DNA of 64,000 bases from Vitrella brassicaformis CCMP3155 (GCA_001179505.1 CDMY01000240.1:62001-126000); one strand, 5' to 3'; shown: positions 1,222-18,102, numbered from the stretch's first letter. Numbers and translations: made by a program. The notes: a model not told the origin generated them from the letters alone.

Positions 1222-2023
1222 GAGGTGCCGACTGGCGCCTGATATGGTTCAACTTGGTGCTTTTAATGAGTTGGGGCAGGCTAATGGCTGCATGGGTGTC
1301 CATGTGTGTGTGTCCGTGTGTGTGTCTGAGCACTGACGCACATAGACTGACTTGAGTGCTCCGTAGGTCAGCGACAGTGACGATGACAAATTTCCCTTAC
1401 TCTCCGTATTTATGTACATAAACGTCCGTCCATCCGAACAGACCACAGGGCACTCACACAGACAGACAGACAGACAGACGGACGGACAGACGGACACACG
1501 CCCGTGCGTCCCACTCGCACGGCTAATAAAGGCCCCCCCTCCTCCCTCCCGCCCCTCTAGCTGTCGTCACTCGCGGACAAAATTGCGGGGAGGGGTCAAT
1601 CAATCGCAGCAACAGCCAAGATATGGCACACTCCATGCAGCACTTAAGACTAATCACCAAGCGTACCAATCACAATACCTGGCCCCATAGCAGCACAGAC
1701 GAACAGACGCAGCCAACGAGCAATCGGACAGGCTCAAATGTGAGTAGGGTGGGTGTGTCTGTGAGACACACACACAAACACACACACAGAGAGAGAGAGT
1801 CAGAGAGACGGAGACATTTTCCCCGTCCGGCCATCATATCAGACGCAGTGCTCAACGCCCAAGGCAGAACGGTGTGTGTCCATTTGTGGCTGGCCGCCCT
1901 CCTTCAGCTCATCAGAGATAGCAAAGAGCACAGCAAAGCCCAGAGACGCAGAGAGAACAGGCAGGCCGAGAGAGACACAGAACACAAAACACAAACCACA
2001 CAAATAGCCGGCTGTCTGCCCCG

Positions 2024-5000
2024 TCACGGCCTAACGACTATACGTCCCTCCTCGACAGCCTTGATGAGGTCCTTGAGGCCCCGCTTTTTCTTCTCAGCCG
2101 CCTTGGCCACCCACTCCTCCCTCGCCTTCTCTCGCGCAAAGTTCTTCAAGTCGTCCAAACGCGCCTGTGCCGCCTTGGTCGCCGCCTGACGACCGTCGAC
2201 CCCCGTGCCCTTGCCCTTCGCAGGAGGTCCTGAGATGGCCGGCCCCTGCAGCCACGATATCTCGTTAGACACCCGTTCATATTGCCGGCTGTGGGTGAGG
2301 ATCTTGTCGAGTGCTCGGCCGGGCTGCCCCGTCTCCTCCTGCCGCCTCATCATGCTCTCCCGTGTGGCTATCGGCGGGTGGCGACCGAGCCTCGTCTGCA
2401 GCTTGCGGCTGCTGGCGTGCTTCCTCATCTGACCCTTGTAGAAGGCGGAGATGGCCAGGTGGGGCGAGAAGGTGCGCTCGATCTTTCTCTCAGCCTCGTG
2501 TGGGTCGTATAAGGGTTCCGCTTCTTGGTCTTCCGCTTGTGCTCGCGAAGGTTGGCCAGGAGGTTCTCTGTGCGAGTGCGGAGGGAGGGGGAGTATTTGA
2601 TGAGGAAGGCTTGGGTGAGAATGCCCTTTGCCGGCGCCCACATGATGTCATCGGCCTGTCAAACAGCACAGACAGAGACATGTAAGGAGAGGCCATCTTG
2701 TGTGTGTCTCACCTGTGCCACAGCGAAGTTGTCGTTGTGGTTGAAAGCTCCAAAGTTCATCCAATGAGGGTGCCTCATCAGCTACCGGTCATGGAAGCCG
2801 ATCTCCCCCCAGCCCCCCCTGCACCCCCGCAATATATTCAAGATCATGTAGGCTTTGAACACAGGACACAGGAAGAGCTCCCACAGCCACACGAACGCCC
2901 AAAACACCAGCAGGGCACGCACACACGGCGGACCGATGGCATTGTCGCCACTAAGACTGCTGCTGCCGTCAGCTGTCGAGACGGAAGGAGCTGGCACATC
3001 GGTGGCTGTCTGAGTCTGTGTGGCGTTTGGTGGCACTGCGGGTGCAGGAAGGTTTGTCTCTCTCGGCTCATAATCTTGGTCGCCCGCCTGTGGGGCCTCG
3101 AAGGCCCACAAGAGGCTGGTGAGCAGGCTGACTAAAACGGCGAGGAAGAGCACACAGAGGGATATATACAGGCCCTCACTGCGACGCATCTCCCACCAAC
3201 GGGTCACCTGAGTAAAAGGAGAGAGTGACAGAATTGACTCCATGTCTCTGATAAAAATATTTGAGGCCTACGGTGAGGAGCACAGGGGGCGATCGGTGGG
3301 CCGCTCTCAGAGTTTCTTTGCGAAAGCAGCCGGCGTCGAGATGTCTCATCACCGGCAGGGACAGAATGATCGACAGGGGGACCACCTACACACATGAGAC
3401 AGACATAAGACGGAGCGAGAGACACGACCATCCCATCTCCAATTTCCTCCTTTTTCTTTCTTTGGCTGACTGGCCATACATACCCATGCAGCCGTGCTGA
3501 TGAGCCCCAAACCTGACCCCGGCACCAGCCATCGCGGCAGCATGAGCACAAACAGGGAAGACCACAGCATCGGACACACCAGCCGCACGCTCAGCAGCAG
3601 CACCTGCTCCACGGTCGACAGGTAGGGGTTGCGCAGCCACATGCCGGTGAGAGGGTGTTCGCGGTAGAGCACTCGCTTGGAGATGACATCGTCCTCCATG
3701 CGGAACAGGATGACATACCGCTCGAATATATGGCGGATGGGGTCGTCGGCCCGATCGCGGATGCCCTCGATCCACGCGGCGTCCTCAGGGCGGTAGCCGG
3801 TCTTCCAGCCCTCCCCGCCCTGCTCGAAGAAGGCCAGGGCGCGCTCCATTTCTTCGTCCTGGATGGTGCTCTCCTCCCGCTGAGACCTCTGCTGACGCAT
3901 GGCGCGGGCGGCCGCAAATGCCAAGTCGCGACCACCTGAAACCCCTGCCTCTCTGCAACACACAACCAATGGTGGAGAATGGATTGTCCTCATTCTAGTT
4001 AGTGGTCATCATGATGCATGCCATTGAGCCACACCTTCTTCTCCTTGCAGGCTCGATTCCATTCAGCGGCGACACGAGGGCCTCGAGGACGTCGATCAGC
4101 TCAGGTTTCGCAGCCTCTTCGGGTGCTTCTTCGGTCCGTTGTGGTAGGGGTGGGGCGGCCGGCCGCTGGAAGAGTGTCGCGCGGCGGCGCTGAGTGGCAA
4201 TGTTGACAAACTGCGCGGCCTCGCCTGTCGTGTGGAACAGTATCTGAGCCGAAGAGCGAACACATGCATACGGGACAGACAGGACAAGTGTGTGTGCATA
4301 TGGTCTGCACGGTAAAGTCACCTTTACAGTGAAAAATGGCTGCGGCCCGACTGTCTCGCGCCTTCTGCACTTGAGGACGACTCTCCGCCCCTCCTCGCCC
4401 GGCAAACAGGGCAGCATCGGGTCGCTGCCGTCAACCAAGTCGGCAGCCACAACGTCCGTCCACTGAAGGCTGCTTACGAGCTCGGCCTCCTCGGGCAGCG
4501 CCGACGGCACCTGGTAGTCGCGGCTTCTTCTGTCCAGCCGAGCGTCGAGCACCGATGCCATCCTGCTGGCCGCGTGCATCACCGAGTCACGCCTGTTGCG
4601 CGCGAAGGGCCCCGAGGGCGCTGCGTGTCTCTGTCTTTTTGAGCGCTGACTTCCATCTCCACGTCGTGTCTGCTGCGGGTGCTCCGCAGGACGGTCGTGG
4701 GCGCGCCTGCGCCATCGTCATTATCGACAGCGGACAGCCGGAAGTCGAGCCCTTTCTGGTCGGCTTGCACTGAGAAAAGGAAGGGCGTCAGGTCCTCAGG
4801 GGCGACAGGCGGCGGCATTTCGGCCTCCTCTTCTGCCTCAGACATCTTCTCGTCCCGCCGTGGCTGCAACACCATCCCTCGTCTCATTGACGGGCTGGGC
4901 GTCGCTTCTCCGGCCAGGCGCGGGTCGGTCGACAGCTGCACTTCAATGACGACAGGGTACCTCTGGCCCATCCAGGCCGCTTCCCGGGGCGCTATCACCC

Positions 5001-8000
5001 GAGTGGACTCTTGGTAGGCTGCAAGTCGCCATTTGTCTTGCTCGGAGACCTCTGACTCTTCAGCTGTGTGTGCGGTGGCTTCCTCTGACGTCTCCTCTTC
5101 CCCGCCCTCTTCGCTCTCCGGCCGCAGCGGGGCCTCCAGCATGGCTTCAAAGACATCCGTCTTTATGCCGCCGAAGTATTCATCTTCTGTCCTCGGCTGT
5201 TCTGGGGCGATGCCGATGGATACCCTTCTCTGTCGATAGCCTGCAGCTTTTCTCGCTTCTCTGAGCACCAGCATTGTGTCTCTCATGAGCCGGTCCACCC
5301 CCTCCTCCTCGCTGACCACCTCCCGCCGTCTCGTGGGCGATTTCTTCCCAGTGCCCTTGACGTCAAGCGCTGACGGTTCTGCGAACACCCCTGCAGCCCC
5401 CTCTGAGCCCTCCTCCATCAAGTCGAGCTCGCCCACCTCGGATGTGCGAAACGTTATGAGCGGGTGCTCTGGCGGCTGCTCGGACAGCTCACTCACCTCC
5501 TCTTCCTCCTCATCACCAAACGGCTCCTCACCTGCGAAGGCCGGCAGCATGGCAGAAGGGAGGAACTCGCCGGGCCTCGGCGGTGGTGGCGGTGGCTCTG
5601 GGGCCATGACTGCCTGTCGGAGCATCGCCAGCTCTGCCTCGTGCTCCACCTCGGGGGGCCGCGATGGCGGGGCGCGCGAGAGGTCAGCGAATCGGAGGGA
5701 AGGGGAGGGGAGGTCGCCAGCCAAGAGGCTGACGATTGGGCGCCGGCGTTCCTCATCGACCTTCTGGTGCCTGAAGGTGGAGACACGCAAAAATGAAATG
5801 GCGAGATTGGCAGATTGTTCTGGCTTACTTCCTGGCGGTCCAGTATTTCTGAATGACTTGTGAGGCCTGGTCCAGCCGGCGGTGGAAGACCTGCATGACG
5901 ACCCGCCGCCGCACCTCGGCGAAGGTGAGGCCCCACAATTGGGACTCCATGGGGGGAATCAGATCCTCCCATATCTCATCCTCAACGTGCTCCGCCAACA
6001 CGCGGAAGAAACTAGAGAGACAAGAAAATGGCACACCAACACACTTTCGCGTCTCTTTGTTCGCTCCGCTCACACGAGGAGCAGTGTCTGCACAGGGAGG
6101 AGACCATTTGGGGGGCTGTAGACAGGCAGCAGGAACTTGCGGTTCTGCTCGACCACATGGGAGGCCTCATCCAGCATCTCCGGGAGGTCAAGCCACCCCA
6201 CTGGATCGGTCGGGCTGAGGAGGATGCCCAGCCTGCGGCACGTGAAGCGTCGCTGCAGTGCGGGGTTCTGCAGGATGGGAAGGGCGTCGATCACTGCCGA
6301 GAGGCGACACCAACCTGAAATGCGAAGAGGGTATCATCGTCTGTAGAGACATGTGTCTCTGTGTGAGGTCAGGTTGTCTCACCAAACCACACGCCAGCAT
6401 CTTGCTCGAAGGCCTCCGTCTCTTTGACGATGCCCATGAGCAGGTCCTTGGCCTCTGCCTCAATTGCGCTGGAAAACTGCTCCCTAGCCGATTTCCGCTT
6501 CCTCGCCCGGCGCCCCGTGAGCACCCCCTCAGCCTGGTAGTCCTCGCCCCACACACGGCCGCTGATCGTGCCTGTCGGCTTGGCACGCATGCGCTCCCGG
6601 CTGAGCCGACCGATGAGAGGCGTCCGCTCTAGATGGGTTTTGATGAATATGAGGGAGAGGTCCCCTAGGTAGGGATAAGCGCTGAGGTCGCGGCGTCGGG
6701 CGAGGACGGCCAGGGCGATCAGCAGGACCAGCAGCATGAAGATGACGAAAGCGGGCACCCAGGGGGTCTGAAGCTTCACTTCGTCAGGCTCTAGCGCCAT
6801 CCTGCGCAGACGTGTACACACAGACGCAGAAGTACCACTTTGTTTCCCACTTTCTGTCTTTTTTCTTCCTGCTGGTTACTCACACGGGTGCGGCCTTCCT
6901 CGGATGCAGCTGTGATGGGGGGAAGGCCGCGTGCTGTGCGAGCCTTGTGCATGCGCATGTGACGCCATCGCTCCTCACCTGCACTGCCCGGCACCCCCGC
7001 TCACTCCATTCGTCATCGGCTCCCTCCCGCGACCGACATGCGACACTCTGCCGACTGTCCATCAGCCCCTGAGACACCGGCTTGGACGTGGGCAGCCAGA
7101 CCAGCAATGGCAAAGACATGTCGGTGACCGGCAGGGGTGCGCCGGAGGGCAGGTGTGCAGTAAGGAAGACGAGCTCGGAGAGGCGGCTGGTCGTTGGCAG
7201 GTCTGTTTCAGGCATGTAGCCGCTGGCGTTGTCTCGGAGCATCCGAACAGACGGAGACGAGGACACGCCGCCACCTCCCGGGTCGTCCCGCCAGCGCTCC
7301 GCCACCAGGGACACGTTGCCGACCGTCTCGTTGTCCAGCGTCACCGAGGACGACTCACGGAACGCCTCGTACAGCTCGTATCTTGGCAAGACTAGCCCAT
7401 GGCTGCAGCTACTGGGGCTGTCGTGGGTGCTCAGCGTCATGAGGAGGCTGCCGCCCATCCATGGCACTGTGGAAAGGGTGCATGGAGGCCGGGCGGGGAC
7501 GCGGCGGTAAGCCATGGGCAGGGACTGAAGGTCGGTGTCGTTGGCCAAGGGGTCTGTCATCGTTCGGACAGAAGACATTTGAACGCGCATCGTCACCAGC
7601 GGATTGGCAAGCTGTTAAGACACCGGCAAGAGAGAGAGAGAGAGAGAGAAATGCATCTGCCGGGAGCGTGTGCAGAGGTTACCAGTGTCATTGGTGGCCC
7701 GTCAGGCGTCAGCAGCTCCAGCGACTTGTTGGCAAAGATCCTCTGGACTGACAATACCGACGCCTGCAAGAGACGCGCTTTGCGCACACCTTAACAAAAC
7801 ACATATTTTTCCTCGAAAGTGCTGACCAATATGGCCGCCGCTTCCGGGTCTGCAGGAGTCTGTTCGTATGGGTTTTCCTCGTCCACTGGTGGCTCTCCCG
7901 GATAGGTCAGCCGCGCCGCGAGATCTGCCATCCCTCCCAGCGCCTCGCCGAGCATATCGACAAAAGACAGGGGGATATCCGCAAAGGACGTGCAGTGGAC

Positions 8001-11000
8001 GGTGTGCCGGAGGATGTCTAGGATGAGCGACGCCGCGTGTGTCGCGGCTGTGGCTTGGAATAGATCGTGGCTGAGCAGCTCGGTCACTTGGGCCGTTTGT
8101 GCCCGAGACCAGTCCACAGGGGCGCAGCCAACACGCGCCTGACCAACAGTCGCCAAACTCATCGCGTCTTTCGTGTGGGAATGAATGGCTACCTGTATGG
8201 TGCGCAGGGTCTGCAGTGTGTCGTTGACCATTCGCGGCGAATACGGGATGTCTCCTGACGTCGTCGCTCGTACCGTTGCCGTCACACCTGCCAGAAGCTG
8301 GCCCGTGTGACTCATGTCAGACACCACTCGCAAATCTGAACGCACACACATTCACAGCCACGCACTCTTCTCTCTCTGCCACATGCACGGTGCCTCTCTC
8401 AGCCACCGACCCCTCATGGCCCGATCGGTGGCATTCATCCCCCGCTCGCCGGTCGTGAGGCCCACATTAATGGCCTCCAACACAGCAGCCTCCGACACGG
8501 CGCCAAAGACGTCCCTCGCCCTCCCCCAAACCATCACCCACGACCGGTCAGTGGGCCGGTCGGTCACCGAGCCGGCCGGCAGACGGGCGAGTATGGTTGG
8601 GGATGAGACGTATTCTGTGTGGTGTAGGGGCAGCTGGCGGGCCACGGTGACAAAGTCGGGCGAAGTGGAGAGGATGCACGTGTAGAAGGAGAAGGACAGG
8701 GGGCTTCCGATGTCATTGGGCATTTCGGGGTCGATCCAGCCCGTGTGGGTGATCTCAAACACACTCAGGAAGCTGTACGCTGGCCCTGCACTCACGGAAG
8801 AAAGAGGTATGCGACCGACCATGTTGCTTATTTGCTCTGTCTCCTTGACCGACCGTCAGTGAGGGTGACGTCGATGCGGCCATTCACAGGCGGCAGGTTT
8901 GGGACCATCTCGCCTATCGAATGTCCTTCATGCAACCGCAGCCGATACGGCATCTCCCACCTGCTCGTCAGGTCACTTTGTCGGAATTCCACAGCATAGC
9001 TATCGATCCCTTTCCTGCTCTCTTGGCTCGGTGTCAGCGACACGTCTCGCCCAAAGGATGGGTCGAGAGGCGCCGTTAACAGCACCCTCGGCGCTGCTGA
9101 TGAGACCAATGGACAAGCAAGCGATTCATCGGTCGGGACAGCCAGGCCGATCTCTGTCTCCGCCAGAGGGTCGACGATGGTGCATTGCGGCTCCCGCAGT
9201 CGGGTTCTGTGACATGGCTGTCCTTGAACGGCAGAAAAGGAGCCGTCTTGTTGTGGCTCGACCAACGGCGGCTCGTCGTCTGTGTCGTTGACAACGATAT
9301 GCGAGACGGTCGGCACGTCCACGTGAAGCGAAGAAGGAAGGTCAGCAGGGGCACTCGCGTTGACAGGGGCTTTTGCAAGAGGCCGCGGTGGCAACAGAAA
9401 GGCATTGCTGGAGAGGCCGGAATCGTTGACAAATGTGTAGGCGGTCGATGGATCGATAACGGGGTGAGCGTGAGCGAGGCTCGCCATCTCGATGGATGCC
9501 TTTACCTCAATCCATCCCGCCGGCTGAGACATGAAGGCCACAAACAATGTGAAAAAGAGACAACCTTCGGAAGTGGCGTTACCGGCTTGTCGATCTTCCA
9601 CCACGTCTCCTCGACAGGGTCGGTGTTTGTCTCATCAGCTCGCGTCAGCATGTCCGTGCAGTTCTGAGCGTATATCTGCAGGCTGATAAAGAGGTTTTCG
9701 GGGGCTGGCTGGGGCCACGGTGGGTCGTCAGACACCAAGAAAGGCAGCCGTGTGAGAGGCAGAAACCGACACGACACGACCAGCCTGAAGTCGCAAAAAC
9801 GGATGGATGAGCAGGTGAAGGTGTATTGCGTTCGGCGAACCTGGTGTCGTTGTGGACGGCCGATTGGGGGATGGGGTGCTGCGTTGCAATGTGCACAACG
9901 AGGGGACATTCGGGACCGATATGCATTGGCGCCCCGATTTCAACCCGATTCTTGAGGCCGTTCTCAACGATTCGGACTGAGACACGCATGTGAACGACGC
10001 GTATCAGAGAGAGGTGCGAGTGCTGCCGGCTGCTTATGTACCTGTAAAGGTCACTTCAGCCCTTCCCAATATGGGTTCATCCGTCAGGGCCTCATCCTCC
10101 TCCACCAGATCTCCCAGCCCCCACAGCAGAGATGACGCCTCACCACCAGCACCACCCGTGACAGCTTCCACGGTCTGCAGTTGTCTCCCCTCCTCGTCTG
10201 GAGCACCAGTGGTCGTCATCGCGTTCTCGTCCTCAGGGGGCTCCTCTGTCGTCGTTGCATTGATGTCATATATTGGTTTGTCTCGCCCCCTGTCAGCTGG
10301 TGGACTGACTACTGGAAGCACTGGGTCGACCTCTTTCCTCTTGGGAACACGGTAGAAACGCTGTGTGACGGAGACATTGATGTACATGTACAGGCCCGGC
10401 GGGAGCGAGGCAGGAGGGATGGCGATGTGCTGCTGCAGCAGGGGGGATGCTGGGAATGTCAAATTGACGGGTGTCAGGGAGACCTCGCCACCAAGAAGAA
10501 CTGCCCATTACATGGGATACTTGTTCGTGTCTCGTGTGTATCTTTGTGAGTGGCACCTTGGTATCGATGTGCGGTCCATTGTGTGTCGTTGGGCATTGCC
10601 ACGCGTGTGTCTGTGGTGGTGAGACACGGGAAGGGGACCGAGTTCATCCACCAGGCCTCTTCCGCCGGGTCCAGGTGGTGGTATTGCTGGGAAGGCATCA
10701 ACTCGACACGCAGGTTTATGCCGCTGCTCTCGAACACCTCCTAGACTCCCACACACAGACACATACGGACAGAGACACGAGACACGAGACACGAGACACG
10801 AGACACGAGAACGCTGTCATTCTCACTTGGTGGCTGGGCGAGAGGCTTTGAATTTAGGCAGCACCGTCCTTGGCAGCAACGTCACTTCAAAGTCGGTGCT
10901 CCCTTTCTCGCCAGACACGGCGACCGACACCTCCACACGAAACGCATACACGATGCTGCTGGTGCGATTGATCTCATCAAGGCCGAAGAACAGAGGCATC

Positions 11001-14000
11001 AAGTCCGTCGTGGCCAGAGACACGCCCGTCTTGCCGACGAATGCGTTGAGGACGGTCTGCACACGCAGCAGCTGCACGTACATCATGGCATGGCTGATCG
11101 CCAGATGGCCGCCATCCTCCGTCACGGCAGTGAAGTGCAGGGCGGTCCAGTGGATGTGCGCCCACGGCCAGGCGGGTGCTGAAACGTTGCGGAGTGTGAA
11201 CCAGACACGGTTGTTGCAGCCGACGAGAGGGGGAAAATCAACTTGCAGATCCAGGGGGACGAAGGAATCGCTGACGGGTGGGGTGACAGGCGTGTTGTTG
11301 TCGCCCACCATGAGAGGGAAAAAGTGCTGCATTTTGGGTCCACCCAGCACCTCTGCCGTCACTTGATCTCTCCACACACAGACGGCGGCCGTGTTGGTGA
11401 GATCGAGGGGACATGTGCCCATGTCCGCAGCATTTGCGCTCGACGGCAGCTGCAGGAGCTTATCGAAGGTGACGGTAAATAGACGATAAGCGGCGTCCCA
11501 CTCAGCAGCGACAGGGGCAGGGTCCAGCACAGGAACACACAAGTGCGGCGCATCTAGGTCAGCACAGCCACTGGCGGCCACCACCGAGGGACCATCGGAA
11601 GCATCTCCATCACACGAATACCAGGCCAGAGTGGCTGCTGGTGGAGGTGGGGGTGTGGCGGGGCAGATGACAGCCGTGTCGTTGGCACCGACAGATGAGC
11701 AGTTGGGCACACAAACAGCCGGGACTGGGATGCGGTCTTCAGAAAGCGGTGCATGGGGCGAGCAGCTCCAGTTGGGCTCGGTGTCGCACGTGGCTGAGCA
11801 GCCGTCATGTGAGAAGCGGTTGCCGTCATCACCTGATACGATTGACAAGCGGAAAGAAGTGAGATAGAGAGAGGTAAACGTAGTGCGTGTAGATGCATTC
11901 ACACATGTCTCGCGTGCAGCTACGACAGCGTCCCCACACAGCGACGCGCATCTGGACACTCCACCGGTGGAGCCACACAGGTATCCCGTCTCGATGTGAC
12001 ACCGAGCCGAGCACCCGTCGCCATCCACTGTGTTGCCATCGTCACCTGCACACCCCGAGACACAAAAACGGAGCAGAGTCTTCCCTGATTCTCTCCCTGT
12101 GTGTCGTTGCGTACACTGTTCACTTCGGACGCATGTGCCGTCCCCACAGACAGGCCTCATGTGATACCCGAGGCCCACGCTATACAGGGCGTCGCCGCCC
12201 AGTGCCATGAGGGCCTCGGCGTTGACTTCGGAGGTCCATGTGGTGGGCAGTACCTCCCAGCTATCTTCGATCTTGCAAAAGGCACTGCATGCACACACAC
12301 ACACACACATCAGGTAAACACGCCCCATGTTCATTGCACGTCTGTCTCTTCCCCACCTGCATCTTTCGCCTCCATCGTTCTGACGGCACACACACGCAAA
12401 AGACACAGAAAAACGTCACTGTTGGCGTGCAGACATCCACGTCTTTCTCTCCCCCCCTCAATGACTCACCCGTCCGTCGTCGCATTCCTCGTCAGGGCAC
12501 ATGGTGATTCCATCCCCGCACACGGCCCCGCCCTCACTCTCCACGTGCACATACCCCACCGGCACCCAGGCGCCCGACATGTGGCCCCAGCACACGAGCC
12601 CACGACCGGTAGTGACGAAAGCCGGGATGGGGAAGAGCAGCAGAGAGTCGTTGGTGTAGAGGTTGAAGCCCGTGGAGGGGCTTAAAGGCTGAGACGCAGC
12701 TACCATCGGGGAGTACGCCTGAATTCACAGAAAGAAGAATGTGGTGAATGAAAGGCGCATCACTGTCTCCGTCTTTCCACCCGACCGATTTGCCGCATCC
12801 AGCCGAGTCCTCGAGGATGGCCAGTCTGTCCTGATTGCTGAGGTACGCCCCCTCCACACCAATGGTCATGTTCTGCCCGGCCTCCACCCACCACTGACGG
12901 CTGCCCTGCGGCTGGGCCACCGAGAGACGCCCCGCGCTGATGATGTGCGACTCTGATGATGCATCGCATCCGCTGGCCGCGTGTGTGCAGTAGCAGAGCA
13001 GGTAGCTCCCCGAGTCGCTGATCTCGCCCATGTCAAAGATGGCGCGTGATGTGTCCAAGGGGTGGGGGGAAGGGCTCGGTTGATCGATGTTAGAGGCTGG
13101 AAAGCAGAAATGGGGTGTGATTTCGCTGCACAGTCTTGTGAAGTGAGTGTCTCATGCTTACGTGACAGCACGGTGGATGGCTGCAGGTCGGGATCACCGC
13201 ACTGCGAGGTGGCATTGGCGTCTGCTTCGAAAATGGCGAGTGAGTCGCTTTGGTTCAGGTGCCACCCCTCGATGGCCACTGTGCAGTTGCTGTCGATAGC
13301 ACACGTGTAGTTGCCATGCTCTCGTGCGCCTGACCGCAGCACCGACAAAAGAGCGACCTAAACTGGCCGGCATTGTCCTCTCGTCCTCTTGCTGACCTAC
13401 CTTGCACCACCAGCAGTCCAGCGGGATGAGTGAAAGACGAAGGATCGTCGCAGTCATCCTCGTCGCAGAGACACAGCTGACAGGGACAGGAACCCGGGGC
13501 AGACACACAGACTCTTCTGCTCGCCCCCACCCACACAAACCTGATAGATGCCCGGCGAGGTCACAACGCCAAAGCCAAATGTCGCATTCCGCCCGTCGGC
13601 ACTGACATTCGCTTCGGCGACTTTTCCGGCCAGAGACCCGGCTGCAGCCCATTGTGCCGAGCCACACTCGGCGATCTCGTCTGCTGTCGAAGGAATCGTG
13701 GTGGGTGGGTCGGGCGGCAAGGCTGACAGTCTGTATGTCTCGGTGAAGCCGACGCCGATAATTGAGAGGAGCAGTGGGGCGGGGCCTGCTGGATGGACGA
13801 AGAGAGCGGATGAATTCGCACCTGGACGGAGAGAGAGAAGGAAAGAAGCAAGAGGACACATGTATCATCTTCTGTGATGGTCATGGCCCATCCCATCTTT
13901 CTCACCCACTAAGGATATCAGTCCGACTTCGCGGTAGTCCGGCAACGCCGGATCATCCGTGCTGCCATAAGGCGCGCAGATGAGGAACCGCCCCGGCTTG

Positions 14001-17000
14001 GTCGGCATGCCGTAGTCGACGTCGAGCACACTGAGACCGATAGCACTGCCCACCAACAGCACCTCGTGGCCCAAGGGGTTCACCACGGACGGCGTGGGCC
14101 TGTCAAAGAAGAGAGAAGGGTCCGTCAGCACAGATGACGGGCCGCACCCGAGGTCGGGATCACCGAACTGGCGAGAAAGAAAGCACAACAGATTGGTGTG
14201 AGCGAGAGAGAAGGAACGTTTATTGACGTCCGCACCTTGGTGTTGAGCATGGCGCTTATCTCGACCGCCCCTCCGGTGACGGTGAGGTCGCACCCATCGA
14301 CAGAATCCACCCCGCAATCCCACTGGTTGACAGGACTCCTGTCATATACTGCCCGTGCCCACAACACATACACACAAGTGTTGCCTTGCCGGACGGTCGT
14401 CTGTGTCTGGCTGTGGGTGGGGTGGTCTGTGGCTGCATGTCTACACACCGCTGAGTATGAGGTTGCCGATGGTCTGAGTGTACTGCGACGCAGCGGAGCA
14501 ATTGACAGGGTCCAGCACCGGCAGTGTGCCTTACTCGGTCGCCTGGCAATAACGCACCTGAGAAGGAGACACAGACATACAGGCATCACAACCACGCACT
14601 CAGGCTGCTGCTCATCATCGTTTTGCCCACTTTGAATCCGGTGATGGCCTGGCTCCTGCCTGAACAAACACAATGGCAGGCGACACATGGATGAGACACT
14701 ACAGCGAATGGTCCTCAGGTATCCTCACTGATGATGTCGTAATGAGTCACGGTTTCTGGAGGCCCGGGAGGGGAAAAGGTGAGTGTGGCGTTTGAGGTCG
14801 AGACGAGTTGTGCCATGTCGAGGCTGTACAAGACACACCGGCGCGACGCGGCGCCAGCAGCATACAGGTCGAATGACCTGCCACACATAACACCCAGAGA
14901 GACACACACACTCTCATTCATGCAAATGCTCGTCCCTGTCTCTTTGGCCTTCCGACGCACCTGCACCAGAACCGCCGCAAGCATGCCGCGGCGCAGCCCC
15001 GCGGCTCGATTGTCGACGTGCTGGTCAGTGTGGCGGCATACACCGCCTTCGTCACGTTCTTGGCGTCTTCGAGCGTGAGTGCTTGTGGCCAGCCATCCAT
15101 GCTGCCCAACGAGTAGCCAGGCTGCGTGTAGACGAAGCCAATGTCGGGTGTTGATCGAAAAGCCAACAAGGGGAGGTCTGCACAGAGAGAGACAAACCAT
15201 AGTTGTGTATTCGTGAACCGTACGCCCGCCCACGTACGGTACCGCCTATGTCAATGTCAAACGCAGCTGTGGCAGTCCCCGTGGTCGCGTTGACGGCCAC
15301 TGCCAATGGGGTCTGGAAGGCCTCGCCGGCCGGCAACCCCGCAGGGGTCGATGGGGAGGCGCACTGACAACACACAAGACAACCACACACACCACATTCA
15401 TCTGTGAGATGAGCAGCTTCGTGTGTGTGTGTGTGGTCACGTCTGTCGAGCGACCTGTCCTGATGTCTGTTTGTCTGTCCGTCTGTGTGTCTGTCTTTCT
15501 GCCTCGGAGTGGAGTGCGTGCATGCACGCATACTTTGTGTGTATGAGCACCTCGTCGCTGAGGTCCGCCAGCTTCAGTCGGTCCTCCACCTGCAGACCGC
15601 GACCCCCCACATGCAACCAGCACTTGTCCACCGCGTCAACGTCATACGCGCTCGACCCCACGCCCGACGCAGTGATGCCCAGCCAACACAAGACCACTCC
15701 CTGAGACGGCACACCTGCCAAAACATGCCAAAAGGTAAGGAAGATGGTGATTGCAATGGTTGTATACCGTCGATGGTGAGGTTGCCGACATCGACACTGT
15801 ATAGGTCGGGAAGGATGATATTTGACGCGTGGCACTGTGTGTTGCCGCACCAGCAGAGACGGTACTGGCCCGTCACAACCGACTGCGAAAGGGGCCGCGA
15901 GTCCACCAAAAACAGACCGCCGCTGCCGCCCTCACTTGGAGCGCTCAGACCTGACACCGATGCAATGCCCGCAAACACAGCAGGTGAGGGAGAATTTGTG
16001 CGTGTTGGTGGCTGACCATCATCAGGGAAGCCCCTGTGTCTCATGGACTCTCGCTCAGTGTCGCCGCATGCCTCCTCGATGGGCCGCGTGACCAGGCGAG
16101 TGCCATTGAGTGCACTGGGAGGATTGCCTGTGATCTGCACGCGACAGATGAGGCCTAACACACACCGCCACTCAGCCGCGCCAAGTGCGGGGCCTGGCGT
16201 AGCGGACAGCACAACCACACACAAGAGACACAAAGGGCCGTTCATTCTGCTGTCGTGTCTCATTTCAGCGACCTTCCAGTGTGATGTCAGCGACTTGTGT
16301 GGTGAAGTCCTGCCCCTCGTTGCAGCCGTCGAGATTGTTGGGGCAGATGCACACCCTGAAGGAGCCGTACCCCTGCACCGCGACGTCCTCCCACACTATG
16401 GACGTCACATTGGCCACCGAGTCGTGCTCCAAATACGATGGGTACTGCGGCAGAGAAAAAAGAAAGACAGAGAGACACAGTCCGATCCATTGCTTGAGGC
16501 GCATCAGTGGCTGTGTGTATTTGCCAGCTGACCATGAGCGGGCGGGGTCTGTTGACGAGATCAGGTCTCTGCAGGTGTGAGTCGGGGTCGCCACAATTGA
16601 CGGACGACGGCATGATGCGCATCTGAGCGAGCATGGTGAGGTTGAAGACGCTCGATGACCACAGGTCTGTCCTCATCGTGGCACTGTGGATTTCCCCAGA
16701 CATCAACGTCCGAGAGAGCGGCGCAGTGACAGTAGGAATGCCTGACAGGACAGGAGGCCTCGTGTTGGCGTGGATGAGGGTGTCTAGGTCTTGACTCACC
16801 TCTGAGTGTGATGAGGCCGTTGCCCTGCAGTACTTCCACCGTGTACTGACGAATGCTGACGTCGCACCGGCTGACGACGTGCCGTGAGCACACACACGCC
16901 CGGACTCTCCGGTCAGACAGATGGAGGGCCGTGAAGCTCAGTGGGCTCCTGCATACCAAACACAGCCCAGGCATACGAGATCCTCACCAGACCACCTTGT

Positions 17001-18102
17001 GTCTGCCTCCGAAACTTACGATGTGTTGAAGACTTGGTATTCGTTTTGTCCAGTGAGGTTTTGGAGGGGCGTGGACACGTCCACCCAGCCGATCGACGCG
17101 AAATCGGCCACTGAGCCTGGGGTCATGCCCGTCACGAGACTCGCACTCGCATCGCCGCATTCCCTCTGACCCAAGTGCACACACATATTCTCTTCTGTGT
17201 GTGTGTCTCTCTTTTCGATGTGTCTCTGGCGCTCACGTCAGCGTCTTGCACAATGAGCCTGTCAGTGGTTGCGTTGAGGTCTGACCCCTGCACCGTCACG
17301 GAATACTCCCGCCCCTCAACGAACTCACGCACGTCGGCAGGAGAGAAGTCAAAGCCAAATACTGATGGCGGGCCTGCACGGCACCACAACACACGCATGT
17401 CCACACAAACATCACTGCTGGTGGTCCATATCCTGACCGGCAGTGTCGAAGGTGAGCTCTCCGCTGGGATTGTTGACGTAGGCGTCAGCTGTTGCAGCAG
17501 CGTCGACCACCAGGTTGCCATCCAGCACAAGTGTGTAGGTTGTAAAGGCCTGCAGCGGCGCCGCCACACGGATCTTCAACACAGCCCCGGTCGGGGGCGG
17601 CACCTGAGAGGATGCATACGCAGAACAGGACATGGTCGACACGTCTTTCCCTTTTATGTCACTGACTTGGAATTGCTCGGCTGTGGGCGACGTGACATCG
17701 ATTGTGTAGGCCACCTGGCCGCCTGCCGCCTCAAACCGTATCGACCTGCATAGACGCCACGCATGACGCAAACAGACAGACAGACAGACAGACAAGAACT
17801 CCCTCTCTTCATCTCGCATCCATCGGGTGTACCCAGTGCCTAATTGTATGTTGGCGTCGAATTCCATGTCGATCTCCGGCGCGAGTATGGACCTGCTGGC
17901 GTCACTGGGGCTCTTGACGTACGACACAGACACCAGCAGAGGGACAGCTGCACTGGCCAGGGAAAGGAGAAGGACCGCCACAAAGGCCGCAGGCAGAACA
18001 ATGCCGCCGTGGCCTGCAGGAACAGAGAATGACCAAGAGAGGGCTGGCCTCATATGCACGGCCGGATTGCTGCGTACTGAAAGGCGCGATGAGGCGTCTC
18101 AT
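2024..18102 (-). CDS. Giant multi-exon polycystin-1/REJ-GPS-like membrane receptor
   Basis: Spliced start MRRLIAPFS|HGGIVLPAAFVAVLLLSLASA (signal peptide; ATG 18102). Then an Ig-like segment, repeated G.Y.LC.C...C...F...G.L.V.G modules, CGDG..CDDGN..DGDGCS repeats (~11750-12520), and a REJ-like PL.F.FY...LP.G...V...D.FGA motif (~8500-8720). A GPS-like C....WS..GC......C.C.RL motif (~6920-7040) precedes a TM (~6700-6765), and 4 further hydrophobic segments lie at 2860-3620. Several 3'-half exon junctions were checked by eye and join in frame. One in-frame TAG (2782) and one frame change (~4510-4640) remain unresolved. Confidence 0.75.

What the first reader, a model, noticed from the sequence alone, without database searches (positions are those of the whole stretch)
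2024..18102. Channel-less polycystin-1-like receptor with a giant modular ectodomain in an alveolate
Seen in sequence: a spliced gene with signal peptide, an Ig-like domain, about six Cys-modules, Myxococcus-type Cys repeats, a REJ-like region, a GPS-like motif directly before TM1, a long cytoplasmic loop and four more TMs starting at EHPLTGMW...EQVLLL. Established: animal PKD1 has REJ-GAIN/GPS-TM1-PLAT-TM2-5 followed by a 6-TM TRP-like part. Inference: this is the PKD1 N-terminal 5-TM module alone, with no pore domain, and with PLAT replaced by an acidic loop of several hundred residues. It may be an adhesion or mechanosensing receptor that partners a separate channel.
Basis: partly seen in the sequence, partly recalled or inferred. 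Interest (0 to 1): 0.78.

Follow-up and report, generated by a model that had tools for sequence, protein, structure and literature searches.

The report
Channel-less polycystin-like giant algal receptor
This is a real, roughly 4,100-codon gene of the alga Vitrella brassicaformis for a giant surface receptor built like the front half of polycystin-1 (GPS motif, one membrane helix, a long inner loop, four more helices) with no ion-channel half. It is one divergent member of a family of 30 or more such genes in this genome, so it is interesting but not unique.

Summary
A minus-strand, multi-exon gene runs from ATG 18053 to stop 2024. It has a signal peptide, a sub-threshold Big_5 Ig-like match, repeated Cys modules and true Myxococcus-type Cys repeats (61 bits). 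A GPS motif at Pfam's threshold lies 32 residues before TM1. An acidic cytoplasmic loop of about 860 residues and four more TM helices follow. There is no PLAT and no PKD_channel.

The polycystin reading is supported indirectly. The helix motif before TM2 recurs at 39 places in the genome, nearly always 2-5 kb downstream of a GPS motif, including in genes with bona fide REJ domains. None of those contigs carries a channel domain. Direct similarity to animal PKD1 helices could not be shown, because the PDB profile searches were blank and the AlphaFold models were poor.

Three points are new:
- The GPS reads R-L-A where the cleavage site is H-L-T/S, so it is probably not self-cleaving.
- The public annotation (CEL95870.1) cuts off the last 437 codons as a separate gene. 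A metagenomic orthologue contradicts that start.
- One in-frame TAG (2782-2784) interrupts the conserved C-terminal tail.

The scan has already described two paralogues of this kind elsewhere in this genome (s1-235841, s1-215944).

The parts
2024..18053 (-). Whole gene: ATG at 18053-18051 to TGA at 2026-2024. A crude model gives about 45 exons and about 4,100-4,200 codons. Introns are 42-198 nt, median 67.
   Evidence: Coding-potential map and DP exon chain. No gap between coding exons exceeds 198 nt. The 3' third was checked against P0121 and L020.
17928..17999 (-). Hydrophobic core of the N-terminal signal peptide.
   Evidence: Hydropathy peak 2.54 at residues 25-43; translation.
17442..17609 (-). 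Ig-like (Big_5-like) stretch, sub-threshold.
   Evidence: Pfam PF13205, 21.7 bits against cut-off 23.6, E 3.4e-4.
12786..17361 (-). Cys-module region: four clear Y/F-x-[LV]-C-x-C modules plus two degenerate ones. No Pfam family.
   Evidence: Neighbouring modules match at pairwise E 1e-8. Distant ones share the motif only.
11770..12523 (-). Myxococcus-type cysteine-rich acidic repeats (DUF4215 / TIGR02232), three to four units.
   Evidence: TIGR02232 61.2 bits, E 5.7e-17. E 7e-45 to DUF4215 proteins. Pfam DUF4215 is sub-threshold on single exons.
8679..8914 (-). REJ-core-like signature split by an intron: 'PPvnGridV' at 8846-8914 and '..F.i...GW.D....PL.F.F' at 8679-8789.
   Evidence: hhalign against a profile of four Vitrella REJ exons. 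Profile columns 244-266 match at E 0.067 and columns 261-291 at E 0.031, collinear across the intron. Each match is weak on its own. Pfam REJ is not detected.
6925..7017 (-). GPS motif with four Cys. The cleavage position reads R-L-A instead of H-L-T/S.
   Evidence: Pfam GPS 21.4 bits and 23.5 bits, over the cut-off. Aligned with 7 paralogue GPS exons. That profile hits adhesion-GPCR GAIN domains in the PDB at 2.9e-8. AlphaFold pLDDT is 86-92 for these strands only.
6699..6761 (-). TM1, followed by RRR (positive-inside).
   Evidence: Hydropathy 3.15. GPS-to-TM1 splice junction: donor 6883 (GTGAGT), acceptor 6801.
3679..6698 (-). First cytoplasmic loop, about 860 residues after splicing. It is net acidic, has no N-glycosylation sequon and almost no Cys. 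It holds conserved blocks, including an IQ-like helix exon at 5829-6016.
   Evidence: Composition by 200-residue block. Collinear conservation with metagenome contig L020, 54% identity over the 5829-6016 exon. Pfam IQ is not detected in this gene.
3595..3678 (-). Pre-TM2 family motif (..R-E-H-P-L..W.R-N-P..T..Q..).
   Evidence: The paralogue-only profile A11 hits here at 16.3 bits, E 0.4 genome-wide. Profile A2, which includes this gene, finds 21 loci. tblastn to the C27 REJ/GPS gene gives E 0.002.
3526..3615 (-). TM2.
   Evidence: AlphaFold helix 215-244 of P0121; hydropathy.
3299..3513 (-). TM3, split by an intron at 3383-3480.
   Evidence: Helix 249-287 of P0121. Exon map of P0121. The 3269-3382 exon is 67.5% identical to L020.
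3100..3183 (-). TM4, preceded by W-W-E-M-R-R.
   Evidence: Helix 305-332 of P0121.
2818..2928 (-). TM5. It follows an S/T/P-rich outer loop of about 60 residues that holds the only sequon of this region.
   Evidence: Helix 390-426 of P0121.
2782..2784 (-). In-frame TAG, 13 codons after TM5. The orthologue has Trp at this position. The public model CEL95870.1 ends here.
   Evidence: tblastx alignment and frame read-out.
2024..2781 (-). Conserved C-terminal tail exons beyond the TAG: the post-TM5 motif H-P-H-W-M-N-F at 2712-2781, then 2518-2655 and 2027-2122.
   Evidence: Conserved with L020 at 41-45% identity, with open frames and a clear GTGAGA...CAG intron at 2656-2711. The same P-x-[LW]-x-[DN]-F motif follows TM5 in paralogues.

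Best explanation
One gene of Vitrella brassicaformis encodes a giant type-I-oriented, five-pass surface receptor.

Ectodomain (about 2,850 residues): signal peptide, an Ig-like stretch, lineage-specific Cys modules, Myxococcus-type Cys-rich acidic repeats, a beta-rich region with a degenerate REJ signature, a helical stretch and a GPS motif.

Membrane base: the GPS is followed by a 32-residue stalk, TM1, an acidic cytoplasmic loop of about 860 residues with conserved blocks, then TM2-5 and a basic tail of about 190 residues.

Family: it is a very divergent member of a Vitrella family of 30 or more GPS-plus-5-TM receptors. Some of these carry true REJ domains. The family looks like the N-terminal, non-channel half of polycystin-1 without PLAT and without the six-helix channel half.

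Inferred mechanism:
- The ectodomain binds or is pulled by an outside partner.
- The GPS reads R-L-A instead of H-L-T/S, so the protein is not self-cleaved, and no tethered peptide is freed by shedding.
- The signal therefore passes as a conformational or mechanical change through the 5-TM base to the large loop and tail, which act as the output or scaffold.
- With only five helices it cannot take a pore position in a polycystin-2-type tetramer. Any link to the PKD2-like channels encoded elsewhere would be as an accessory.

Shown: the anatomy, family membership and absence of channel and PLAT. Inferred: topology, non-cleavage and signalling route.
For: Anatomy:
- Coding chain and exons.
- TM1 and four later helices.
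- The ectodomain holds all but one of the N-glycosylation sequons counted and most of the Cys. The loop has no sequon and very few Cys.
- GPS at threshold, placed 32 residues before TM1 by the best splice pair.
- Myxococcus-type repeats.

Family:
- The TM2-motif profile built from paralogues alone finds 39 places. Nearly all lie 2-5 kb downstream of a GPS hit on the same strand.
- This gene's motif is hit at 16.3 bits, E 0.4 per genome, exactly at the expected spot. By my rough estimate that is about 1e-5 for a 5-kb same-strand stretch.
- The REJ-bearing genes on C204, C27, C362 and C411 have the same base.
- The family GPS profile hits solved GAIN domains at 2.9e-8.
- No PKD_channel on any family contig. 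PLAT occurs once in the genome, elsewhere.

One gene rather than two:
- In orthologous contig L020 the loop, including the position of the annotated start of CEL95870.1, is a single 498-codon open frame.
- L020 is collinear with window 6016 to 2030.
Against: - No transcript data were available. The link between the ectodomain/TM1 part and the loop/TM2-5 part rests on gaps of 198 nt or less, on paralogue architecture and on an orthologue contig that ends just short of TM1.
- The public annotation splits the region.
- This gene's own scores are marginal: GPS 21.4-23.5 bits, TM2 motif E 0.4, REJ signature E 0.03-0.07, Big_5 below cut-off.
- No sequence or fold match to animal PKD1 helices.
- Both AlphaFold models are low-confidence.
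- The in-frame TAG at 2782-2784 may mean that the tail is not made, or that this copy is starting to decay.
Confidence: 0.7

Rival explanations
1. Two or more separate genes: a secreted or single-pass adhesion protein (18053 to about 6383) and an unrelated four-helix membrane protein, as the public annotation has it for the last 437 codons.
For: CEL95870.1 / A0A0G4EIN4 is annotated as a separate 437-residue protein starting at window 4417. No transcript evidence was available here. Orthologue contig L020 ends before TM1.
Against: - The annotated start Met aligns to Leu inside a continuous 498-codon frame in L020. Conservation runs upstream to window 6016.
- Only about 370 nt, with coding potential, separate the TM1 exon from that block.
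- GPS hits and TM2-motif hits pair up on the same strand at about twenty loci, and in paralogues the loop and the TM2 motif share one exon.
- The annotation was made automatically with Augustus (PMC4501334).
Confidence: 0.12
2. A decaying or truncated copy. The TAG at 2782-2784 is real, so the protein ends 13 residues after TM5 without its conserved tail, or the gene is an early pseudogene.
For: A single in-frame TAG lies where the orthologue has Trp, inside a stretch that aligns residue for residue. The public model stops there. This gene is also the most divergent family member.
Against: All frames beyond the TAG stay open and conserved down to the shared last 30 residues. No other break was seen in the checked 3' third. 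An assembly error or a strain-specific change is equally possible.
Confidence: 0.25
3. A lineage-specific adhesion receptor whose likeness to polycystin-1 is convergent or limited to a shuffled GPS module. The 5-TM base would then be unrelated to PKD1 TM1-5.
For: No sequence or fold match of TM2-5 to any solved chain, PKD1 included. No PLAT. The atlas's nearest named cluster (PLAT-bearing) scores only 0.76-0.80, below the level the tool calls meaningful.
Against: REJ plus GPS directly before TM1 is the polycystin-1/REJ signature, and four paralogues with REJ share this base. The helix order, loop sides and TM count match PKD1 TM1-5 (established knowledge). Two different queries picked the same PLAT cluster.
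Confidence: 0.15
4. An adhesion-GPCR-type receptor (GAIN plus seven helices).
For: The best PDB matches of the GPS profile are adhesion GPCRs.
Against: There are five helices, not seven, with an 860-residue loop after the first. No 7tm family match was found in any exon. Paralogues carry REJ.
Confidence: 0.03

Closest known systems
Animal polycystin-1 family (PKD1, PKD1L1-3, PKDREJ; sea-urchin REJ proteins)
   Same: A very large modular ectodomain ends in a GPS motif directly before TM1. A cytoplasmic first loop follows, then a TM2-5 block with the same in/out order. Paralogues carry Pfam REJ. Separate PKD2-like channel genes are present in the genome.
   Different: No PLAT in the first loop, which is instead a mostly acidic loop of about 860 residues. 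No TM6-11 channel-like half and no polycystin (TOP) domain. The GPS lacks the H-L-T/S cleavage residues. REJ shows only a degenerate signature. Similarity of TM2-5 to PKD1 could not be demonstrated with the tools at hand.
Vitrella GPS-plus-5-TM receptor family, e.g. the REJ/GPS genes on G000:C27 (about 62-72 kb) and C204 (about 93-102 kb), and the two paralogues reported earlier by this scan (s1-235841, s1-215944)
   Same: GPS, then TM1, a loop, a pre-TM2 H-P motif, TM2-5 and a post-TM5 P-x-[LW]-x-[DN]-F motif, then a basic tail. No channel domain.
   Different: This gene is the most divergent member (16 bits against 40-95 bits for the others). It has no paralogue detectable by single-sequence search. 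Most paralogues keep H-L-T/S, while this gene has a non-cleavable GPS. Its first loop is far longer, its long loop between TM4 and TM5 lies outside the cell, and its ectodomain has a different set of modules.
Adhesion GPCRs (GAIN domain plus 7TM)
   Same: A GPS/GAIN-type motif next to the membrane. The family profile hits ADGRF1, ADGRL3 and latrophilin GAIN domains. GAIN domains are known in alveolates: Tetrahymena has more than eight (PMC3321182).
   Different: Five helices rather than seven, a giant loop after TM1, and no secretin-type 7TM match.
Myxobacterial DUF4215 / TIGR02232 cysteine-rich repeat proteins
   Same: Three to four repeats in the ectodomain match at 61 bits, and up to E 7e-45 to whole proteins.
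   Different: Here the repeats are one module of a eukaryotic multi-pass receptor.

Membership tests
Polycystin-1 family (PKD1/PKD1L/PKDREJ) | REJ domain in the ectodomain (Pfam PF02010) | tested here: inconclusive
   No PF02010 match on any exon or in the six-frame search at E<=1. hhalign against Vitrella REJ exons aligns the REJ core signature in two adjacent exons at consecutive profile columns, E 0.067 and 0.031. The spliced sequence was not searched.
Polycystin-1 family (PKD1/PKD1L/PKDREJ) | GPS motif within a GAIN domain immediately before TM1 | tested here: met
   GPS scores 21.4 bits and 23.5 bits against a cut-off of 22.5. It lies 32 residues before TM1 and has four aligned Cys. The family profile hits solved GAIN domains at 2.9e-8. 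The rest of the GAIN fold was not modelled, so only the GPS part is shown.
Polycystin-1 family (PKD1/PKD1L/PKDREJ) | Autoproteolytic H-L-T/S site | tested here: not met
   The site reads R-L-A. Most paralogues keep H-L-T/S.
Polycystin-1 family (PKD1/PKD1L/PKDREJ) | PLAT domain in the TM1-TM2 loop | tested here: not met
   No PF01477 match on the loop exons. The only genome match is on C882.
Polycystin-1 family (PKD1/PKD1L/PKDREJ) | Eleven helices with a C-terminal channel-like six-helix half (PKD_channel / polycystin domain) | tested here: not met
   Five helices. No PF08016 match on contig C240, while 12 matches lie elsewhere. The conserved frame ends at 2024.
Polycystin-1 family (PKD1/PKD1L/PKDREJ) | TM2-5 homologous to PKD1 TM2-5 | tested here: inconclusive
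   phmmer and hmmsearch against PDB sequences were blank. The AlphaFold model has pLDDT 52 and Foldseek found nothing. The atlas's nearest named cluster is PLAT-bearing at 0.76 and 0.80, a lead only. A likeness of the pre-TM2 motif to the human PKD1 sequence rests on my memory only and was not tested.
Vitrella GPS-plus-5-TM receptor family | Pre-TM2 motif (..V.RR-D-H-P-L..LF..NP..) a few kb downstream of a GPS, same strand | tested here: met
   The paralogue-only profile hits window 3595-3678 at 16.3 bits, E 0.4 genome-wide. The hit is 3.3 kb downstream of this gene's GPS. tblastn to the C27 gene gives E 0.002. The score is weak; the position is what counts.
Vitrella GPS-plus-5-TM receptor family | TM4 preceded by W..RR, TM5 with a W-[EP]-L motif, then P-x-[LW]-x-[DN]-F after TM5 | tested here: met
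   Seen by eye in the alignments and read-outs, in this gene, L020, C317, C221, C656, C27 and C204. Not scored statistically.
Adhesion GPCR | Seven-helix secretin-like domain after the GPS | tested here: not met
   Five helices. No 7tm family match.

The most novel reading that the evidence does not exclude
The chromerid GPS-plus-5-TM receptors, this gene among them, could be the free-standing ancestral form of polycystin-1's N-terminal half. In that case a GAIN/REJ receptor base existed and diversified to 30 or more genes without any channel half, and animal PKD1 arose by fusing such a base to a PKD2-like channel. This member would then show that the base can work without self-cleavage, using a giant cytoplasmic loop as its output.
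Probability: 0.3. Interest if true: 0.7.

Novelty: new variant of a known kind. Interest (0 to 1): 0.45.

Why it matters
Polycystin-1 is studied almost only in animals, where its receptor half and its channel-like half are fused. What the first five helices do by themselves is therefore unclear.

A large algal family has just that half, and separate PKD2-like channels are encoded elsewhere in the genome. This offers a natural experiment on whether the GPS/5-TM base signals on its own. This gene adds a non-cleaving member with a giant loop, conserved in a second, uncultured organism.

On the practical side, the public gene models here are wrong. One gene is split and its tail is cut at a TAG. 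This affects any catalogue of chromerid surface proteins used to trace the origin of apicomplexan adhesins.

Tried and rejected
Searches and models that led nowhere:
- Single-exon phmmer against PDB for the TM2 exon, the GPS exon, P0121 and paralogue L027. Nothing was significant; the GPS exon's best rows were adhesion-GPCR GPS motifs at E 0.4-1.
- A profile of the pre-TM2 motif against PDB: no polycystin hit.
- The big phmmer search with the TM2 exon: only the gene's own annotated fragment and one metagenomic orthologue among 1.84 billion representatives.
- Word searches with the GPS exon and with paralogue L027: nothing.
- Own-genome single-sequence searches with the TM2 and GPS exons: self only.
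- A scan of JGI metagenome contigs for further orthologues: nothing.
- AlphaFold of the GPS exon with 7 paralogue rows: pLDDT 44.7, with only the GPS strands confident, so no fold search was run on it.
- AlphaFold of P0121: pLDDT 52.3. Foldseek against PDB was meaningless.
- MAFFT alignments of paralogue fragments to P0121 were unreliable and were not used for folding.
- Pfam IQ on this gene's IQ-like exon: no match. Two paralogues score below threshold at 15-17 bits.

Limits of the gene model:
- My DP gene model is wrong at several junctions. It cut the GPS at 7005 and mis-joined 3385-3127. It is used only as a rough count.
Exons were searched one by one by reference. The joined model served only for hydropathy and composition counts inside scripts.
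Full report
**What is there.** The window is G000:C240:62001-126000 of Vitrella brassicaformis (the source of P0121). G+C is about 60%, so long spurious frames abound. A codon-usage map shows one chain of minus-strand coding blocks from about 18060 to about 2030. A crude dynamic-programming model links them into about 45 exons and 4,177 codons. Introns are 42-198 nt, median 67. The first ATG after the upstream stop is at 18053, and the final stop is at 2024-2026. That fits a 5' end near 18053.

**Limits of the model.** The model is wrong at some junctions. It cut through the GPS and mis-joined the TM3-TM4 exons, as the annotated fragment shows. I use it only for rough counts. All searches were exon by exon, by reference.

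**Ectodomain.** Pfam on single exons gives only near-threshold hits:
- Big_5, 21.7 bits against a cut-off of 23.6;
- DUF4215, 17-22 bits against 27;
- GPS, 21.4 bits against 22.5.

The Cys-rich repeats are real. NCBIfam TIGR02232 scores 61.2 bits, and the word search gives 190 DUF4215 proteins, the best at E 7e-45. Between the Ig-like stretch and these repeats lie lineage-specific Cys modules. There are four clear Y/F-x-[LV]-C-x-C units and two degenerate ones. Neighbouring units match at pairwise E 1e-8. They have no Pfam family.

Pfam REJ is not detected. A profile of four Vitrella REJ exons aligns the REJ core signature to the end of exon 8831-9631 and to the start of the next exon, 8355-8855. 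The profile columns are consecutive, at E 0.067 and 0.031. This is suggestive and collinear but weak.

In the crude model, the N-glycosylation sequons counted all lie in the first 2,800 residues except one, in the TM4-TM5 loop, and so does most of the Cys. The TM1-TM2 loop has no sequon and very few Cys.

**GPS and TM1.** In the six-frame search of the genome the GPS of this gene scores 23.5 bits, over the cut-off (window 6934-7017). The best splice pair is donor 6883 (GTGAGT) and acceptor 6801 (pyrimidine-rich CAG). It joins the GPS to TM1 with 32 residues between the cleavage position and the helix. Aligned with seven paralogue GPS exons, the four Cys line up. Where most paralogues read H-L-T/S, this gene reads R-L-A. 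That family profile hits solved adhesion-GPCR GAIN domains: ADGRF1 at 2.9e-8, and latrophilin-1 at 2.3e-6 over about 110 profile columns. AlphaFold on the exon was poor, with mean pLDDT 44.7. Only the GPS strands reached pLDDT 86-92. The GPS is therefore supported, while the whole GAIN fold is not shown.

**The 3' third, the annotation and an orthologue.** The one large phmmer search, with exon 3352-4005, found just two proteins among 1.84 billion representatives:
- P0121 is CEL95870.1 / A0A0G4EIN4, a 437-residue 'unnamed protein product' of Vitrella. Its exons are 4417-4322, 4243-4034, 3951-3481, 3382-3269 and 3204-2785.
- P0122 lies on an 8.8-kb ENA metagenome contig, L020, with G+C 49%, so it comes from another organism.

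L020 is collinear with window 6016 to 2030. The matches are:
- the IQ-like exon, 54% identity;
- blocks of the loop;
- the TM2 exon, 58%;
- the TM3 exon, 67.5%;
- TM4 and TM5;
- the last 30 residues of the tail, 45%.

In L020 the loop is one 498-codon frame. The Met that starts P0121 aligns to a Leu inside that frame. The annotated start is therefore a truncation by the automatic Augustus pipeline (PMC4501334).

Conservation also runs past the stop of P0121. That stop is a single TAG (2782-2784) aligned to Trp in L020, inside a stretch that matches residue for residue. After it the frame stays open through a clear intron and two more conserved exons, down to 2024. The TAG may be an assembly error, a strain mutation or a real truncation. 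I cannot tell which.

**Helices and topology.** Hydropathy, the P0121 sequence and the AlphaFold secondary structure agree on four long helices after the loop, at P0121 residues 215-244, 249-287, 305-332 and 390-426. The following features fit an N-out, C-in, five-pass topology (inference):
- RRR directly after TM1;
- a basic TM3-TM4 loop;
- the only late sequon in the S/T/P-rich TM4-TM5 loop;
- a basic tail.

The model itself is low-confidence, with pLDDT 52.3, and Foldseek against the PDB gave nothing.

**Family context (the main evidence).** Single-sequence searches of the genome find no paralogue. However, tblastn of P0121 against the REJ/GPS gene on C27 aligns the pre-TM2 motif at E 0.002, about 1.5 kb downstream of that gene's GPS. 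A profile of this motif built from eleven paralogues, without this gene, finds 39 places in the genome. Set against the GPS hits, nearly all lie 2-5 kb downstream on the same strand. Examples are C317, C368, C439 (twice), C511, C411, C656, C266, C318, C221, C323, C609, C459, C556, C677, C104 and C887.

The REJ-bearing genes on C204, C27, C362 and C411 are among them. Read-outs of C204 and C27 show the same order: TM1, loop, TM2-5, then the post-TM5 P-x-[LW]-x-[DN]-F motif. No channel part follows.

This gene's own motif is hit at only 16.3 bits, E 0.4 per genome. It sits exactly where the family puts it, 3.3 kb below the GPS. For a 5-kb same-strand stretch that is roughly a 1e-5 coincidence by my estimate.

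None of the family contigs carries a PKD_channel match, while 12 such matches lie on ten other contigs. PLAT occurs once in the genome, elsewhere.

**Comparison with the known.** GAIN/GPS domains in alveolates are known; Tetrahymena has more than eight (PMC3321182). I found no paper on REJ/GPS or polycystin-like receptors in chromerids.

REJ together with a GPS directly before TM1 is the signature of the polycystin-1/REJ lineage (established knowledge). This family has it on a base with the helix order of PKD1 TM1-5. The defining PLAT, the cleavage site (in this gene) and the channel half are absent, and homology of TM2-5 to animal PKD1 could not be shown.

The protein atlas gives the same PLAT-bearing flatworm cluster as nearest named neighbour for both P0121 (0.76) and paralogue L027 (0.80). 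This is a lead only.

I therefore file the gene as working like, and probably descended from, the receptor half of polycystin-1. I do not file it as a member of the animal family.

**Earlier findings of this scan.** The scan has already reported two other 'channel-less polycystin-like' receptors in this genome, s1-235841 and s1-215944. My family census agrees with them. It shows the kind is common here, which lowers the surprise of this single gene.

**Verdict.** The gene is a new variant of a known kind. Its points of interest are the non-cleavable GPS, the giant conserved loop, the orthologue in an uncultured organism, the mis-split public models and the in-frame TAG.

Noticed in passing
whole genome G000: The GPS-plus-5-TM family is large: 25 GPS hits and 39 pre-TM2-motif hits, paired on the same strand at about twenty loci. 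None of these contigs has a PKD_channel match, while PKD2-like channel matches sit on ten other contigs.
   Followed up: partly
L020:1-3811 (ENA ERZ893784, contig k147_5699269): An 8.8-kb metagenome contig with G+C 49% carries an orthologue of the 3' third of this gene, with 46-67% identity. Intron positions are partly shared, for example after the IQ-like exon. The organism is unknown. The rest of the contig (3.8-8.8 kb) was not examined.
   Followed up: partly
L036:88-2040 (C368) and L032:1504-2319 (C511); window 5829-6016: The TM1-TM2 loops of two paralogues hold IQ calmodulin-binding-like motifs (Pfam IQ 16.7 and 15.4 bits, cut-off 20.3). This gene and L020 have a similar '..IQK.W..' helix at the same relative place, but Pfam does not score it.
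   Followed up: partly
alignment A6: MAFFT placed the TM4-TM5 pieces of three paralogues onto the pre-TM2/TM2-TM3 part of P0121 ('VW.RR..' over 'VL.RxHP..'). This hints that the two helix hairpins of the base may be an old internal duplication. It was not tested.
   Followed up: no
P0121 residues 14-52 (window about 4034-4380) and window about 4700-4960: The loop holds beta-rich blocks conserved with L020. AlphaFold predicts strand-strand-helix at P0121 residues 14-52, at low confidence. A small folded domain (PH-like?) may sit where PKD1 has PLAT. No family match.
   Followed up: no
window 1412-1690 and 15250-15530: Runs of GACAGACAG-type short repeats, read as RQTD/TDRQ in translation, lie downstream of the gene and in an intron-like stretch.
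   Followed up: no
window 14718-15245: One exon-sized frame has a Cys pattern reminiscent of PAN/Apple modules (C..C......C..F.Y......C.L). There is no Pfam match at E<=1.
   Followed up: no
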